From Caecitellus pseudoparvulus (Eukaryota > Protista > Bigyra: Bicosoecida), in contig CBFFRQ010000073.1 of NCBI GenBank assembly GCA_965644315.1, positions 1 through 64,000 on the forward strand: 64,000 bases of DNA, in the 5' to 3' direction. The notes beneath the pieces were generated by a model. The model was not told the origin of the DNA, ran no database searches, and worked only from the letters and a program-made list of their open reading frames with translations. Position numbers and translations under genes: made by a program. Positions 36,470 to 43,442 of this stretch are shown in pieces. Position 1 is the stretch's first letter; each line of letters begins with the position of its first letter.

Positions 36470-36991
36470 CTAGTCGTACTGCTGCCGCAGCACCATCTCT
36501 TCCTCGCTCCGCCACACGCGGAAATCTTCACCGACGCCACTCTGGCCATTCATGCGCTGGTGCTTCACCCTGTCCTTTGCAGACACCTTGTCCTTCTTCG
36601 GTCCAGATTTGGAGACTGCTGCAGCCGCCGCTGCGGCGGCCGTGGCAGCTTCGGCGGCGGACGCTTGCAGCTCCGACCTGCGGCTGGACTTGGCACGGTG
36701 CGCATTTGAGGAAGGTTCCGGCTCAGGTGCGGGAAGTTCACGTTTTCTGACATTGGAGGCCAGCTTGTATCCGGCTCCTGTTCCGTCCTCCTTGTCCCTC
36801 GCAGCATCCACGTGGGTGGACTTCAAGAATGCAGGGCCACCAGCGTCATCTGCAGCATCCAGCAAGTCTGCCGCTGTAGGCAGCACGGGGCTACCTTTTC
36901 GGCCAGATTCCTTTTTGTTTGGGCACGAGGCTGGGCTGTGTATTGAGCCTTCGCTATCGCTGCTGTCTGAGGAGTATGCCACAAGCGCCAT
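36470..36991 (-). CDS. Small conserved hypothetical protein (173 aa)
   Basis: N-terminal LVAYSSDSSDSE and C-terminal KDRVKHQRMNGQS...WRSEEEMVLRQQYD, resembling an uncharacterised eukaryotic family that ends in WKSExEMxLRQQ(F/Y)D. Confidence 0.7.
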   Translation of the reverse strand: MALVAYSSDSSDSEGSIHSPASCPNKKESGRKGSPVLPTAADLLDAADDAGGPAFLKSTHVDAARDKEDGTGAGYKLASNVRKRELPAPEPEPSSNAHRAKSSRRSELQASAAEAATAAAAAAAAVSKSGPKKDKVSAKDRVKHQRMNGQSGVGEDFRVWRSEEEMVLRQQYD

Positions 36992-37376
36992 TTCGGACGA
37001 GTTTCATGCGCGTTTCGGCTTCGCATGGCAGCCGGTAGGAGCGCGTGTGGGGAGTGTGATGCCCGATTCGGGCGTGGTGTATTAATTGTCCGTGGGAATG
37101 GGCAGTGCTGGCTGTGCAGTTGCGCGGGTGGCCCTCATGCCTTGGCAAGGGGCTCTCTACATGTGCGCTCCAGCTCCACAGCATTTGCACGATGACTGTA
37201 ACTTCCAACTTCCTCCAAATGCAAACCCAATCACTTGCAGGTTGGCTGAAACGCGCGCTGACCACTTGCTTGTGGAAGGGTCCCAGTCAAGTGGGCGGCT
37301 CGTTGGGCGAGCGGTCGTGTGTCGCAGACGCAACACGCCTTGCCACCCTCTCTCCACGGGAACCCTGCACCTCAGT

Positions 37377-40300
37377 ATGGACGGGGCAAGCGTGTACAGG
37401 GAGCCTGACCAGGGTCTGGTTTTTCATCCCGCAGCGTCAGCTGGACACGCACCCTGTCCCGCGTTTGTCGATGCCACCGCCGTTTGCCAGGGTTGCGGGT
37501 TCTTAGGAGGGCTGGTCTTCATGACCGGCCTGGGCGTGAAGGTCTGCCCCATGTGCGCCTGGGCGATGCCAGCGCAGGGGGCTGGCCCCAGTGTGTACCT
37601 CGGAGCATTTCATCCCACCGCGGGTGGCCTCACCATATTTCTATCGTACGGGCATGACGGGCTGACAGACGTGTCCCGCCACCTCACGAGAGTGTTGAAG
37701 AAGCGGGGGCACTCCGTGTGGTTCGACGAGACGTCCCTAACGTCAGGCTGCGACTGGGCGCGAGAGATGGCGGCAGGCCTCTCCAATGCGCGCGCTGCAG
37801 GCCCCCGAGGGCGCGTCATCGCCATGCTGGCCCAGCACGGCTTCCGGCGCAAGGATGGCATGGCCCAGGGGTACTGCCACCGGGAGGTGGCGGAAGCCTG
37901 CCAGACCATGCCTCAGTACCTCCTGCCCATCATGCTGGAAGACATGGAGCCGCCTGCCTGCCTGCGCTCCATGCAAGCCCACTTCTTCGACATGCGGGGT
38001 GTCCTGACGGCGCGAGCATCACCCCCTCACCCCAAAGCCTCCCCCCCTTGGGGTGGCGGCGGTCTGACCCCCGAGGAGTGGCAGGCCTTCCTGACCAGGG
38101 ATCCAGGCATGATCACTGCCGTGAATTCCATCGTGTCCATGCTGGAGACAGGCCACTTTGGCCCGCCACTGGTCCCTGAATCCCTGTGGTGTGAAATGGC
38201 AGCAGGGACAGGAGCTGCTGCAGCGGGTGCGGGGGCAGCTGCGGCGGCAGAGGCCGCGGAGCTGGAAGGGGCCAAGGAGAAGCCAAGAATCTTCATTTCC
38301 TGCGACTCCAAGGCTGCTGCTGTCGGGCAGTACATCGCTACCTACCTTCACGGCGCTGACTATGAAGTGGCCTTCGATGCCGAGGTGGCTTCGTGGGGTG
38401 ACGAGCGGGGGCAGGCCTTTCGTGAGGTGCGGCGGGCATACTTGAAGTCGGCTATTTTTTGGACGGCAGGCAAGACCAACAGCTGGGGCGCGTATAAAGC
38501 TCGGCGGGACGAGCTGCTGGGCGCAGCGTCCGCTGAAGCCCGGGGAGGAGGAGGGGACCCAACACCCACCGGCGTGTCAGGATCCCCCCTTGCTGCCGAC
38601 GACGCAGATGACACGGGGGCAGCTGTGCGACAGGGCTCCACCAAGGCCTGTGAGGCGCCAGTGACCAAGCCTGGCAAGTGCCTCTTCATCATGACTCGCG
38701 ACTCTGTCCTCAGGTCCGAGGCGCCGGGTTCCAACAAGTCCGGGCAGTGCAAGGACGAGTTTGACCTGGCCTTCTCCAAGGGCATCTCCTTCATCCCCTT
38801 GAAAGCGGAGGAGTGCACGGCCCCACTCTCCATCGTCGGATTGCAGTACCTGTCGCTGTCGCGGGCTGTGGAGCGGGACGCCGCTGGCGCGCTGGTGGTG
38901 AAGGAAGAGGCGTTCGCCGCCGTGCTGCCGCAAATCTTGAAAGGCCTCACCGGCTCCCTCGCCTCCGAAGGTGAGCAACTGGTGAAGTCCAACCGCATCA
39001 GGCGCGGCTTGCAGCCATGCGACTACAAGGCGTACTTGGAGCAGTGCTTGGGGCGCATGTTCTTCCCACCCCCCTCGTGTGTGAGCCGCGCCGAAGAGTG
39101 GCTTGCGGCCGCCTCTGCACGGGCGAAGAGCGTCGTGGCTAGCTCCACAAGCAGTGCCTCGATTCTCCGTGGTGCGAGCGTGATGGTGGTGCAGGGGCCA
39201 GTGGGGACCGGCAAGACCGCCTTCGTGCGGCACCTGGCTGACGAGTGGGGCGCCGTGCGTGCACAGCACATTGCTGCAGAGGGGGATGACGCCAAGCTGT
39301 CTGCGCTGCGGGCCATCTCCAGCATTGCATACCAGCTCACGCGGGCCTTCCCGTCCCTGACTGAGATGCTACTCAAGGACTCCTTCTTGGAGAAGCGCCT
39401 ACCGACGCTGACGGCCAGGCGGTGGTTTAAAGACCTCTTCATTGAGAAGCTGCAGCAAGCGGTCGTGTGGGAGCCACTCGGTGAGGGCAAGGAGCCCCCT
39501 CTTGTCATCGTCATGGTGGACGGCGTGGACTTGATGGTGGATGCTGACAGCGAGGACAAGGTGAACACCTTCTTGGAGTGCTTGATGCAGTTCGCCGAGG
39601 ACATGCCAGCCAACGTCGCATTCCTGCTCACTTGCCGCAGCACGTCCTATTGCGACCCACACTTTGGTACGCTGGAGTCTTTGCTGGCAAGGCTGCACAC
39701 CAAGGGCGCCGCAACGTCCATGCTGCCGATGATGGACCCAGCCGGTGCGAGTGAGCGGGAGGACTGCATTCGCAAGTACCTCAGGGATGCCCTTCCGAAG
39801 GCGGTGCCCCCTCCCGCCCCGACGGATGGTGGTGGTCTGGCTCTAGGAAGCCATGGGACACCCACACCAGACCCATTGTCGAGGCAGGAGCAGGGCTCAA
39901 GCCTCACGCGAGAACGGCGCCAGAGCTCTGTGCTGGCCGAGCTGGGCGTTGGAGCCTCAAGCATGCTCGAGGCAGACGGTCCTTGGGCTTCGCAGGTTGC
40001 CAAGGCCACCGACTGCATCGTGCAGCGCTCGGAGGGCGTCTTTTTGTACGCTGTTCAGATCATCAGAGACCTCAAGTCCGGAACAAATCTTTCCCTCAGC
40101 CGCCCTGAAGACTTCCCTTGGGGCCTCCAGAACATGCACCGGGTACTGCTGACACAGGCATTCAAGCCAGAGGACAAACTCAGCGAGACCCTGAGCGGCA
40201 AAGTACTTGCAGTGCTGGGCGCCACTCGAGAGCCCATGAAGCTGCAGCAGCTGGCGAAGATTCTTGGGACGAAACTCAGCGACGTTGATCATGCTGTGTC

Positions 40301-41849
40301 GAAGCTCCAACCATTGCTCCGGTACCGCGACGACGGCGTCGTGCCCGCGCATGGGAGGGTGCTTCCGTGGTTCGAGTCACCTGAAGCTGGGCGCTTCAAG
40401 ACCTTCCCCGCACACGGCCACACGTGGATCATACAGTGGTGCTTGACCGCAATCAGAAGTGAGGAGAGCATGAAGAGCATGTCCGTCCCTACCAGCTATG
40501 CTGTTCGGCACTTGGAAGCGCACTGTGGGCTCGCTCACGACGAGACTGTCGTTGCGGAAGCGCGACAGCTGATGAAGTCCAAGGAGTTTCTTCAAAAGTA
40601 CAGGACCCAGCTTGTTGGCGATCAAGGCATGTCCGCATTTTACCACGATTTCCCACCCAAAGCTGGGCGGGAGCGCTCTGAGGCGATTTTGCGCGGAAAG
40701 CCCGAAGGCTCATTCCTCATGCGCAACACGTCGGATGACCAGCTCTGCATCAGCTTGCAGGTGAACCAGAATGCTAGACTGTACACACAGCACTTGAAGA
40801 TCCTTCCCACAGTCCTGCCTGCAGATTCACAAGAGCTTCTTCGCGTGTTCAGCCAGCTGCGCTCCAAGTTTGATATGCTGATCAGTCAGGGGTGGCCGCC
40901 ACGCGCCACGGAGGGCCCCCTTGCAACGGAGATGGCTGAATTGTTGCAGCATGCAGCCCAAGAAACCATGTACTGCACCCAGCCTCTGTTGGGCATCCTT
41001 GACGAGCATCGCAGACTGGGTCTGGCAACTGTTGACGAAGCCTTCCTCAGCCAGTTCGTGTTCCCGAATGCCGTGTCGCTGGTGCAGCACTACATGGAAA
41101 TGGGCACGCTGCTTTGGCCAGTTGCACCGCAGGCGCAAGTCCCTCAGGTGGATGGTGGCTACACAACTGCGAGCACGATGGCTGAGGTGCGGGGCAGTGC
41201 GTTCCCTCCGCCGGTGCCAGGCAACCCTCCTGGCCCACCCCAAGCCGCGGCCCACTCCAGCCATGGCAGCCAGTTCCGGGCTGATTCCGAGCCACAATGG
41301 GTCCCAACAGGTCCCAGTGCAGCCTCTTCGACGTATGACGCTGCGTATGCCCCCTCAAACTGCCCTGGCTCCTTTCCCGGCCAGCTTCCCCCCCCCGGCG
41401 CAGCAGCACCAGCCGCAACGGGCATGGCCCCGCCGGCGTTCATGTCGACACGGTCACAGGCGCCAAGTCAAGGCACGCGGGGTCCGCCGGCATTTGCATC
41501 GATGCGTTCACAAGCGCCAGGCCAAGGCATGCGGAGTCCGCCGGCGTTCATGTCGACACGGTCACAAGCGCCAGGCCAAGGCACGCGGGGTCCACCGGCA
41601 TTTGCGTCGACAAGGTCGCAAGCGCCAGGCCAAGGCATGCAGGGACAGTTTGGGACGGGAGTGCAGCACCATGCTCACACCGCTGCCTCGACGTATGACG
41701 CTGGGGGATTCGGGCAGCCGCTGGCAGCGCCAGGGCAGGGCGCTCCGGGCGGCAGCATCCCCTGGCATGGCACAGGCCCAGCTGTCCCATTTGGGGACCA
41801 GTCGAGCACCCAGGAAGACCAGCCGGGATCTCAGTCAATGTTCCGATAA
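37377..41849 (+). CDS. NLR-like protein: CxxC..CxxC Zn-ribbon, TIR, TIR, STAND/NACHT-like NTPase with winged helix, SH2, Pro/Gly/Gln-rich tail (ORF open from 37086)
   Basis: TIR1 IFLSYGHD..LKKRGHSVWFD..GCDW..YCHREV; TIR2 IFISCDS..CLFIMT..QCKDEFDLA..FIPL; Walker A GPVGTGKT; AISSIAYQL; Walker B IVMVDGVD; FLLTCR; RSEGVFLYA; SH2 FYH..RERSEAILRGKPEGSFLMRNTS..LCISL..HLKI...FPNAVSLVQHY. Confidence 0.88.
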   Translation: MDGASVYREPDQGLVFHPAASAGHAPCPAFVDATAVCQGCGFLGGLVFMTGLGVKVCPMCAWAMPAQGAGPSVYLGAFHPTAGGLTIFLSYGHDGLTDVSRHLTRVLKKRGHSVWFDETSLTSGCDWAREMAAGLSNARAAGPRGRVIAMLAQHGFRRKDGMAQGYCHREVAEACQTMPQYLLPIMLEDMEPPACLRSMQAHFFDMRGVLTARASPPHPKASPPWGGGGLTPEEWQAFLTRDPGMITAVNSIVSMLETGHFGPPLVPESLWCEMAAGTGAAAAGAGAAAAAEAAELEGAKEKPRIFISCDSKAAAVGQYIATYLHGADYEVAFDAEVASWGDERGQAFREVRRAYLKSAIFWTAGKTNSWGAYKARRDELLGAASAEARGGGGDPTPTGVSGSPLAADDADDTGAAVRQGSTKACEAPVTKPGKCLFIMTRDSVLRSEAPGSNKSGQCKDEFDLAFSKGISFIPLKAEECTAPLSIVGLQYLSLSRAVERDAAGALVVKEEAFAAVLPQILKGLTGSLASEGEQLVKSNRIRRGLQPCDYKAYLEQCLGRMFFPPPSCVSRAEEWLAAASARAKSVVASSTSSASILRGASVMVVQGPVGTGKTAFVRHLADEWGAVRAQHIAAEGDDAKLSALRAISSIAYQLTRAFPSLTEMLLKDSFLEKRLPTLTARRWFKDLFIEKLQQAVVWEPLGEGKEPPLVIVMVDGVDLMVDADSEDKVNTFLECLMQFAEDMPANVAFLLTCRSTSYCDPHFGTLESLLARLHTKGAATSMLPMMDPAGASEREDCIRKYLRDALPKAVPPPAPTDGGGLALGSHGTPTPDPLSRQEQGSSLTRERRQSSVLAELGVGASSMLEADGPWASQVAKATDCIVQRSEGVFLYAVQIIRDLKSGTNLSLSRPEDFPWGLQNMHRVLLTQAFKPEDKLSETLSGKVLAVLGATREPMKLQQLAKILGTKLSDVDHAVSKLQPLLRYRDDGVVPAHGRVLPWFESPEAGRFKTFPAHGHTWIIQWCLTAIRSEESMKSMSVPTSYAVRHLEAHCGLAHDETVVAEARQLMKSKEFLQKYRTQLVGDQGMSAFYHDFPPKAGRERSEAILRGKPEGSFLMRNTSDDQLCISLQVNQNARLYTQHLKILPTVLPADSQELLRVFSQLRSKFDMLISQGWPPRATEGPLATEMAELLQHAAQETMYCTQPLLGILDEHRRLGLATVDEAFLSQFVFPNAVSLVQHYMEMGTLLWPVAPQAQVPQVDGGYTTASTMAEVRGSAFPPPVPGNPPGPPQAAAHSSHGSQFRADSEPQWVPTGPSAASSTYDAAYAPSNCPGSFPGQLPPPGAAAPAATGMAPPAFMSTRSQAPSQGTRGPPAFASMRSQAPGQGMRSPPAFMSTRSQAPGQGTRGPPAFASTRSQAPGQGMQGQFGTGVQHHAHTAASTYDAGGFGQPLAAPGQGAPGGSIPWHGTGPAVPFGDQSSTQEDQPGSQSMFR
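41430..41645 (+). repeat. 54-nt (18-aa) coding tandem repeat, 4 copies in an A-B-A-B pattern
   Basis: [18 protein letters not shown] / PPAFASMRSQAPGQGMRS / PPAFMSTRSQAPGQGTRG / PPAFASTRSQAPGQGMQG; units start at 41430, 41484, 41538 and 41592. Confidence 0.95.
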
Positions 41850-42044: not shown

Positions 42045-43442
42045 ATGGCTGCCGGGCAGTCGGACGGCGACCATGAAGCCTTATTGCAAGAGGTGGCAGC
42101 AGTCCTTGCGGAAATTGGGACAGACTCGGCAAGTGGGGCGCAGGCATCCGTGACTGGAGAGGGCACAGCAGAGCAAGGGCAGCACCAAGGCGACACTGAA
42201 GGTGAAGACGGCAGCGCGTGCCCCGATTGGATGGGCCGCGCTCTGAAAGCAGAGGCTCAGGTGTCGTTGCTACAAGACCAAGCGTCAGCGGTCCGAGACT
42301 CGGTTCGTGACTTGGGTCGTCAGACTCGTGTGGCTTGCATTTCTGTGACTTGAGCCTCGGCCCCTTCGCAGTTCCGGCAGGAAAAACTTCACCTCGAGGG
42401 GCAGATCGAAAGCTTGCGAGACCAGGTCGAGATGCGAGAAAGCGACCTGGACCAGGCGTTCGCAACGCTGCTGCAGGCGGACGCAGAGCTACTGCGGTTG
42501 GCATCAGAGGCAGGCGAGCGAGCTGGGGGGGCAGGGGGCACCGCCGACGACGAAGCCATCCAGCAGCTGGAGAAAGATCTGGAAGCTGCGCGGTGGAAGG
42601 CAGACAACCTGGAGCGGCAGCTGGACAGCGCCCACTTCGAGCTGACCCGCCTGCGGGGAGAGGAGATGGCGTCGCCCACGGCAGCAGACTCCGCCGCCCC
42701 TTCGCGCTCGGACCTGGAGCGCATGGCCCACACTCTGACCCTTGCCGAGCTGAGGGAGCACTACGTGCGCCTGCAGCTGGAGGTGGCTGGCTCTCGCAGC
42801 ACCTTCGCCGAGAAGGACGCGGAGATCAAAGACCGCACAGAGGCACTGGTGAAGGCCAAGACGGAGCTGGCCCAGCTGCGCACCGAGGTGGGCAGCGTGG
42901 AGGCCGTGATCGAAGAGAACGAGCAGCTGCGCGCCATGCTGCTGGACACCAAGGCAGCTGCGGAGGAGGCCGCCCGCAGGCGGCCGTCAGCTGCGACACC
43001 CCCCAAGGGCAAGGTTTCCGGGCGAGGCAGTGGGGCAGGCCTGGCGGGCTCCTCTGCCTCCATCTCAGCGGAGAAGGGCGTGAGCTCCAACCCCCTCGCG
43101 TGGTTCTCCAGCTTTCTCGGGGGGGGGGCTGACAGCGACCCGCCTCGCACGCGCCGCCCCACGGTGTTTGGCGGGGCGGGCGCCGACGGCAGCGAGAGCC
43201 TCGAGGCTGAGCCACGCCGGCGCAGCACAGTGCGGGCGTCGCCACGCCCCACCCCGCCGCCATCGCCGGGACCAGAGGACGAGGGCTGGGGCGGGGAGGG
43301 GGCCGCGCCTCCCATGGCACCCCTGCCCGCCACCGCCGTGCCAGGCACAATCTCCAGCCCGGCTCACACAGAGGGCATGCCGGGTGCCGAGCATAGCAAG
43401 CCAGATGCAGGCGAGTTCTCCGACTCCGCTTCAGACAGCTGA
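42045..43442 (+). CDS. Coiled-coil protein of unknown function; probably one intron near 42290-42370
   Basis: Heptad-rich E/L/A/K/R stretches (IQQLEKDLEAARWKADNLERQL; LVKAKTELAQLRTEV) followed by a disordered tail. Confidence 0.6.

What the first reader, a model, noticed from the sequence alone, without database searches (positions are those of the whole stretch)
37377..41849. TIR-TIR-STAND-SH2: an NLR-like receptor with a phosphotyrosine-reader domain in the sensor position
Seen in sequence: one uninterrupted ORF carries two TIR domains (from about 37635 and 38289), a P-loop NTPase (GPVGTGKT at about 39195; Walker B IVMVDGVD at about 39510; SIAYQL; GVFLYA; winged-helix-like region), and then an SH2 domain (GSFLMR at about 40707-40724, with the invariant FLxR Arg, and FPNAVSLVQHY at about 41061). 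Established: TIR-NACHT proteins of bacteria, fungi and protists normally end in WD40, TPR, ANK or LRR sensors, and SH2 binds phosphotyrosine. Inference: here the repeat sensor is replaced by SH2, so Tyr phosphorylation could control STAND oligomerisation and TIR activation. That would be a guard-type immune or cell-death switch linked to phosphotyrosine signalling in a protist. I do not know of a described protein with this architecture.
Basis: partly seen in the sequence, partly recalled or inferred. Interest (0 to 1): 0.92.

Follow-up and report, generated by a model that had tools for sequence, protein, structure and literature searches.

The report
NLR-like switch with phosphotyrosine reader
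This marine protist gene belongs to an old family, apparently not yet described and also present in Phytophthora and other water moulds, in which a bacterial-type immune switch has lost its usual repeat sensor and ends in an SH2 domain, so tyrosine phosphorylation may control an NAD-cutting enzyme.

Summary
One intronless 1490-aa ORF encodes TIR-TIR-STAND(NACHT/NPHP3_N)-SH2.

The protein is not unique. It is a divergent member of a low-copy stramenopile family of 34 sequences examined here: Phytophthora, Pythium, Globisporangium, Aphanomyces, Saprolegnia, Achlya, Thraustotheca, Platysulcus and unassigned contigs. UniProt calls them only 'SH2 domain-containing protein', and I found no paper on the architecture.

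On a STAND-only tree the SH2 carriers form one group (SH-aLRT 93, below the strong-support line) beside prokaryote-type Zn-TIR-STAND-WD40/TPR proteins; one of these sits in a TIR-STING operon. The TIR1 Glu (aligned to SARM1's catalytic Glu), the P-loop Lys and the SH2 FLxR Arg are invariant. The TIR2 Glu and the last Walker B Glu are not. The genome encodes TK-signature kinases and a second, unrelated STAND-SH2 gene.

Best reading: a phosphotyrosine-gated STAND switch driving a TIR NADase (~0.45). Gating, NADase activity and an immune role are all inferred, none shown. The scan noted this stretch before (s1-677817).

The parts
37377..41849 (+). Whole intronless gene, 1490 aa: Zn ribbon-TIR-TIR-STAND-SH2-low-complexity tail
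37485..37556 (+).
37626..37991 (+). TIR1 (aa 84-205); Glu170 (CHRE; family CLNE) is invariant and aligns with the SARM1/TIR-1 Glu of WVHKE
38280..38870 (+). TIR2 (aa 302-498) with a low-complexity insert; Glu461 present here but D, Q or H in most family members; keeps the C-terminal motif that joins the single prokaryotic TIR to STAND
39009..40601 (+). STAND module of NACHT/NPHP3_N/TANC type with helical and winged-helix parts; Walker A 39195-39218; Walker B 39507-39530 (DGVD, last Glu missing)
40638..40802 (+). SH2 N-half (betaA-alphaA-betaB-betaC-betaD) with Arg1098 (alphaA2), Arg1116 (betaB5), Thr1118, His1139 (betaD4), Lys1141 (betaD6)
40812..41042 (+). ~77-aa helical insert in the SH2 betaE/EF region, shared only with the L005 homolog; coding-like base use and no replacement change against the sister strain
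41043..41123 (+). SH2 C-half (betaF-alphaB-betaG)
41127..41846 (+). Pro/Gly/Ala/Ser-rich tail; GYTT at 41157-41168 shared with the L005 homolog; 54-bp x4 repeat at 41430-41644; fastest-changing part of the protein

Best explanation
A phosphotyrosine-gated STAND switch with a TIR NADase output. An early stramenopile took a prokaryote-type Zn-TIR-STAND-repeat protein, duplicated the TIR and replaced the WD40/TPR sensor with an SH2. Step 1 (shown by sequence and model): the SH2 has a complete pTyr pocket and is fused, without a flexible linker, to the last helices of the STAND module. Step 2 (inferred): binding a pTyr site on a kinase substrate in trans, or being clustered on one, releases the resting state. 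Step 3 (inferred from STAND biology, own knowledge): nucleotide exchange and ring assembly. Step 4 (inferred): the rings bring TIR1 domains together and these cleave NAD+ through Glu170, either depleting NAD+ or making an ADPR-type messenger. TIR2 serves as scaffold or spacer. The trigger is most likely infection or stress signalling.
For: In all full-length members examined, the TIR1 Glu (32/32 with that region), Walker A GK[ST] (34/34), SH2 betaB5 Arg and an alphaA2-region Arg (34/34) are kept, despite ~25-35% identity. The TIR1 profile hits SARM1/TIR-1 best, with Glu aligned (E 5.6e-11). The STAND-SH2 junction G-x-x-x-F/Y-H is conserved. Closest non-SH2 relatives carry WD40/TPR at this position, and the Bacteroides one lies in an operon with TIR-STING, a metallo-beta-lactamase fold and RyR. 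The genome has kinases with HRDIAARN/GPIKWMAPE and HRDLAARN, the TK signature used in PMC3019232. A second, unrelated STAND-SH2 gene exists in the genome.
Against: No binding or enzyme data. No lineage-specific expansion: one copy here and 1-2 per oomycete species among hits, unlike typical NLR repertoires. The last Walker B Glu, present in 117 of 129 prokaryote-type relatives, is absent from 33 of 33 SH2 carriers counted, so ATP cycling may be weak. No full-length classical tyrosine phosphatase was found. The full-length model failed (pLDDT 35), so SH2-STAND packing is unknown. The insert disturbs the +3 specificity pocket in this member.
Confidence: 0.45

Rival explanations
1. A conserved physiological signalling scaffold, not an immune or death switch: the SH2 only localises the protein to pTyr sites, and STAND and TIRs act as assembly platforms, as in TANC/NPHP3-type proteins.
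For: Low copy, vertically kept across oomycetes, Platysulcus and this host; purifying selection in the core; Pfam WHD_TANC1 and NPHP3_N hits; Walker B Glu lost and TIR2 degenerate.
Against: The invariant TIR1 Glu and SARM1-like site argue for a kept enzyme; the ancestry is from defence-associated proteins.
Confidence: 0.25
2. The SH2 reads phospho-Ser/Thr or another phosphorylated ligand (Spt6-like), for example its own tail, rather than pTyr.
For: 23 of 27 oomycete-type members end in a conserved L/I-N-R-x-I-S motif; the window tail is Ser/Thr-rich; Spt6 SH2 binds pThr (PMC7530234) and is the top VIA row, tied within 1 Z with pTyr-binding SH2s; P. infestans has only two TKs (PMC3019232).
Against: The pocket has the canonical pTyr set alphaA2 Arg, betaB5 Arg, betaD4 His (PMC7530234); the R-x-I-S motif is absent from the window protein and several members.
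Confidence: 0.15
3. Cis or reciprocal control by the protein's own tail tyrosine: pTyr1262 (GYTT) either bites back into the SH2 (Src-like off state, firing on dephosphorylation) or links two molecules (STAT-like on state).
For: GYTT lies just after the SH2 in both the window protein and the 35% identical L005 homolog, where it is the only tail Tyr; chance of a shared Tyr 4-mer 0.003-0.025 in shuffles, noticed post hoc.
Against: Oomycete and Platysulcus members have no such tail Tyr, so it cannot be the family mechanism.
Confidence: 0.12
4. Artefact: misassembly, fused gene model, or chance SH2 match.
For: The SH2 Pfam score is only at the cut-off in this member.
Against: Independent contigs span the fusion; the same order of domains occurs in about 30 other clusters.
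Confidence: 0.01

Closest known systems
Oomycete 'SH2 domain-containing protein' entries (e.g. UniRef100_K3WAX1 Globisporangium ultimum; P. sojae PHYSODRAFT_470533; S. parasitica SPRG_12621; A. astaci H257_11773) and Platysulcus PLAT6337.2
   Same: Same TIR-TIR-STAND-SH2 order (the Platysulcus entry starts inside TIR2) and same conserved residues; one group on the STAND tree.
   Different: Database entries only; I found no description of the architecture. The window member is ~25-35% identical, has a 77-aa SH2 insert and a long tail, and lacks the C-terminal NRxIS motif.
Prokaryote-type Zn-ribbon-TIR_2-NACHT(NPHP3_N)-WD40/TPR/HEAT proteins (bacterial NLR-related proteins; e.g. Bacteroides cellulolyticus WP_154042508.1)
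   Same: Zinc ribbon, TIR with GYCLNE motif, same STAND subtype; nearest relatives in both protein searches and the Atlas.
   Different: Repeat sensor instead of SH2; usually one TIR; Walker B DxxDE intact. Taxonomy was confirmed for only a few of these rows.
SARM1 / C. elegans TIR-1
   Same: Best solved-structure match for TIR1, with catalytic Glu aligned; activation by forced TIR proximity is the inferred shared logic.
   Different: SARM1 uses ARM and SAM domains and senses NMN/NAD+ (own knowledge); no STAND, no SH2.
Plant TNL, fungal NLR and animal TeTIR-STAND proteins (TEP1, NWD1/2, NPHP3; bioRxiv 10.64898/2026.09.21.753143)
   Same: Tripartite effector-STAND-C-terminal layout with a TIR or TIR-like NADase effector.
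   Different: All end in LRR, WD40, TPR or ANK repeats; the preprint has no mention of SH2, oomycetes or stramenopiles.

Membership tests
STAND NTPases (NACHT/NPHP3_N type) | P-loop domain scoring as NACHT/NPHP3_N with Walker A GK[ST] | tested here: met
STAND NTPases (NACHT/NPHP3_N type) | Helical and winged-helix domains after the NTPase | tested here: met
   GxFLYA and P-x-G motifs align across the family; WHD_TANC1 over cut-off in relatives
STAND NTPases (NACHT/NPHP3_N type) | Walker B hhhDxxDE | tested here: inconclusive
   First two acidic positions kept, last Glu absent in 33/33 SH2 carriers against 117/129 relatives
STAND NTPases (NACHT/NPHP3_N type) | Nucleotide-dependent oligomerisation | not testable with these tools
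   No multimer model or assay; full-length monomer model unusable
NLR in the strict sense | C-terminal superstructure-forming repeat sensor (LRR/WD40/TPR/ANK) | tested here: not met
   No repeat domain; SH2 follows the STAND helices directly. It is NLR-like, not an NLR.
NLR in the strict sense | Role in immunity or non-self recognition | not testable with these tools
   Only indirect: defence-type operon of a bacterial relative
SH2 domain | Central antiparallel sheet flanked by alphaA and alphaB | tested here: met
   N-half confident; alphaB side low pLDDT in this member because of the insert, but clear by alignment to relatives
SH2 domain | Arg betaB5 plus basic alphaA2 or betaD6 and His betaD4 | tested here: met
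   Arg1116, Arg1098, Lys1141, His1139 (definitions PMC7530234)
SH2 domain | Binding to phosphotyrosine | not testable with these tools
   needs a binding assay
Enzymatic TIR (SARM1/TIR_2 NADases) | Catalytic Glu in alphaC, TIR1 | tested here: met
   Glu170 invariant, aligned to SARM1 Glu
Enzymatic TIR (SARM1/TIR_2 NADases) | Catalytic Glu in alphaC, TIR2 | tested here: inconclusive
   Glu461 in the window protein, Platysulcus and one Saprolegniales paralog group; D, Q or H in the rest
Enzymatic TIR (SARM1/TIR_2 NADases) | NAD+ cleavage | not testable with these tools
   needs an assay

The most novel reading that the evidence does not exclude
Stramenopiles have an ancient, undescribed class of NLR-like receptors that are switched by phosphotyrosine instead of by a microbial ligand. 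SH2 was placed in the sensor slot at least twice independently (TIR-TIR-NACHT-SH2, and a CHAT-like-STAND-STAT-type-SH2 gene in the same genome), coupling tyrosine kinases to an NADase and perhaps a caspase-like protease in an immune or cell-death pathway that Phytophthora also keeps.
Probability: 0.33. Interest if true: 0.92.

Novelty: new variant of a known kind. Interest (0 to 1): 0.73.

Why it matters
P. infestans has only four plausible SH2 proteins and two tyrosine kinases, and the role of tyrosine phosphorylation in oomycetes was left open (PMC3019232). This family is presumably one of those four SH2 proteins (not checked against that paper's list) and gives a concrete, testable output: a SARM1-like TIR on a STAND switch. 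If right, it shows an NLR-like protein gated by a post-translational mark through a single modular reader. It would also show a bacterial defence module being wired into eukaryotic kinase signalling, and offer an entry to immunity or programmed death in heterotrophic stramenopiles, using organisms that are genetically tractable.

Tried and rejected
Word-based homolog search with the window protein found only a sister strain, one 35% homolog and one bacterial-type protein; the SH2 region alone found only the sister strain. The family appeared only with a profile search. Full-length AlphaFold2 from a two-sequence alignment failed (pLDDT 35) and was not used. NCBIfam and PADLOC gave no family assignment beyond generic TIR hits. 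Intron in the SH2 insert: rejected. Upstream start at 37086 or 36552 (as in the ENA 1765-aa call): rejected, the region changes like non-coding DNA and overlaps a minus-strand ORF. Ten literature searches found no paper on the architecture; the one STAND+SH2 hit concerns sponge TRADD-N proteins. The library lacks most subscription papers, so this is not proof of absence. The source organism of the L005 homolog could not be identified. One search was in the wrong frame and is void. The careful tree did not finish; the quick tree was used. The spliced CHAT-like gene in L010 was searched exon by exon only; the joined step was left out.

Full report
Observation. Pfam gives TIR_2 at aa 87-207 (64 bits), a weak second TIR (E 3.9e-5), NPHP3_N and NACHT above their cut-offs, and the N-half of an SH2 at 21.1 bits against a cut-off of 21.

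Gene structure. A 99% identical strain (L006) has the same gene in the same neighbourhood. Against it the folded core has 23 synonymous and 8 replacement changes, the SH2 with its insert 3 and 0, the tail 14 and 11, and the open frame upstream of the ATG 2 and 7. So the start at 37377 is right and the insert is coding. In public runs, a contig of X9 spans 36700-41455. X1 shows a spliced GT..AG joint in the next gene (42301-42371), so it holds some mRNA-derived sequence, and it crosses the STAND-SH2 junction unspliced (40485-40869). X4, only guessed to be RNA, covers the whole SH2 without a skip. X7, on record as RNA-seq, has short pieces in the STAND part. No single transcript spans the gene.

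Host. The window is contig 73 of a 30.6-Mb, GC-rich, intron-poor eukaryote. Its 18S gene is 1697 nt and looks stramenopile to me (own knowledge, no phylogeny made). An earlier unchecked note of this scan places it among bicosoecid flagellates. A neighbouring gene clusters at 90% with a protein of the Symbiodinium sp. KB8 assembly, which from memory carries bicosoecid contamination.

The family. A homolog at 35% identity (P0002; L005:2508-6245) has the same zinc ribbon, two TIRs, STAND and split SH2. A profile of the two against 1.84 billion proteins returned as next-best hits proteins that Pfam reads as TIR_2, NPHP3_N/NACHT, WHD_TANC1 and SH2 (30-35 bits). They come from Globisporangium, Phytophthora, Aphanomyces, Thraustotheca and Platysulcus tardus. 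A search from the Globisporangium protein added Pythium, many Phytophthora species, Achlya and Saprolegnia, about 30 clusters with SH2, one or two per species, named only 'SH2 domain-containing protein' or 'hypothetical'. Two further divergent members come from unassigned GC-rich contigs. The window genome has one copy.

Origin. All other hits lack SH2 and are mostly Zn-ribbon-TIR-STAND proteins ending in WD40, TPR or HEAT repeats; the Atlas look-alikes are bacterial clusters of this kind. On a maximum-likelihood tree of the STAND region alone, the 22 SH2 carriers are one side of a branch against 74 others, SH-aLRT 93 (quick search; long branches for the window group; not a starred branch). 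Shared derived traits back a single origin: TIR duplication, the conserved STAND-SH2 junction, and loss of the last Walker B Glu (33 of 33, against 117 of 129 relatives that keep it). The Bacteroides relative lies in an operon with a metallo-beta-lactamase fold protein, TIR-STING and RyR, a defence-type context. Transfer from prokaryotes to an early stramenopile is the simplest reading, but the tree is unrooted and no donor was tested.

Residues. TIR1 Glu170 is invariant in eukaryotic and prokaryote-type rows, and a TIR1 profile matches SARM1/TIR-1 best with this Glu on the WVHKE Glu. The TIR2 position holds Glu in the window protein, Platysulcus and one Saprolegniales paralog group, and Asp, Gln or His elsewhere, so TIR2 is probably a scaffold. 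Walker A is intact in 34 of 34. The SH2 keeps Arg betaB5 in all, an Arg at or next to alphaA2 in all, and His betaD4 in nearly all; the window protein also has Lys betaD6 (pocket definitions from PMC7530234). A model of aa 1036-1254 is confident for the SH2 N-half and weak for the insert and alphaB; every listed Foldseek row is an SH2-containing chain, and VIA-align superposes the core at 1.5-2 A, with modest Z of 5-6 because only half the domain is well modelled.

Context for phosphotyrosine. The genome has at least two kinases with the TK catalytic loop: HRDIAARN with GPIKWMAPE (L016) and HRDLAARN (L020). PMC3019232 uses this signature for the two P. infestans TKs and notes only four plausible SH2 proteins there, with the role of tyrosine phosphorylation unresolved. 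No full-length classical tyrosine phosphatase was found. A second gene (G000:C18, L010:1578-4795) joins an AAA_16/NB-ARC-like STAND to a STAT-type SH2 (30 bits), behind exons with HFSG|HG and AACHS motifs that resemble a CHAT protease. Its STAND was not found by a search with the window's STAND-SH2, so this looks like an independent fusion. I searched its exons apart and left the joined model out; Pfam did not confirm CHAT on the single exons.

Mechanism. The best-supported reading is a pTyr-gated STAND switch: the SH2 binds a phosphorylated site, the STAND module exchanges nucleotide and assembles, and clustered TIR1 domains cleave NAD+ (0.45). The anatomy and conserved residues are shown; gating, assembly, enzyme activity and biological role are inferred. 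Rivals: a physiological scaffold with SH2 only as an address (0.25); a pSer/pThr reader, given the conserved NRxIS end in 23 of 27 oomycete-type members (0.15); control by the protein's own tail Tyr1262, shared as GYTT with the L005 homolog only (0.12); artefact (0.01).

Membership and novelty. It is a STAND protein and works like an NLR, but it fails the repeat-sensor criterion of NLRs proper. The architecture is already in public databases, uninterpreted. Ten full-text searches found no paper on it; the library is incomplete. I rate it a new variant of a known kind, interest 0.73.

Noticed in passing
L010:1578-4795 (G000:C18, about 250577-253794): Second STAND-SH2 gene: CHAT-like exons (HFSG|HG, AACHS; split by introns), AAA_16/NB-ARC-like NTPase and a STAT-type SH2. 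Looks like an independent fusion. Exons searched apart only.
   Followed up: partly
L001:70-2268 (G000:C93): The only other TIR_2 gene found in the genome: ARM-like repeats followed by a TIR (62.7 bits), SARM1-like layout without SAM hits.
   Followed up: partly
L004:490-2100 (G000:C68): Protein with one clear SH2 (29.5 bits) and a preceding degenerate SH2-like segment lacking the FLxR Arg.
   Followed up: no
L016 and L020 (G000:C18, G000:C13): Two kinases with tyrosine-kinase catalytic loops (HRDIAARN/GPIKWMAPE; HRDLAARN); L016 also has a SAM-like segment. Candidate writers.
   Followed up: partly
L038:4480-9999 and L039:3-4997 (G000:C56, C43): Two large CHAT-STAND proteins; no SH2 hit in the parts fetched.
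   Followed up: partly
L029/L030:4001-9093: Bacteroides operon: Zn-TIR-STAND, metallo-beta-lactamase fold, TIR-STING, RyR domain; closest named prokaryotic relative of the family.
   Followed up: partly
window 36470-36991 (-): 173-aa ORF head-to-head with the gene, 385 bp apart; no Pfam hit; possible shared promoter.
   Followed up: no
window 42302-42370: 69-nt GT..AG intron in the downstream coiled-coil gene, seen spliced in run X1.
   Followed up: yes
L028:1-5401: The divergent member P0079 lies next to a 4154-aa gene with two kinase domains; not seen beside other members checked.
   Followed up: no
P0161, P0168 and other oomycete members, C-terminus: Conserved L/I-N-R-x-I-S motif after the SH2 in 23 of 27 oomycete-type sequences; possible basophilic kinase site.
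   Followed up: partly
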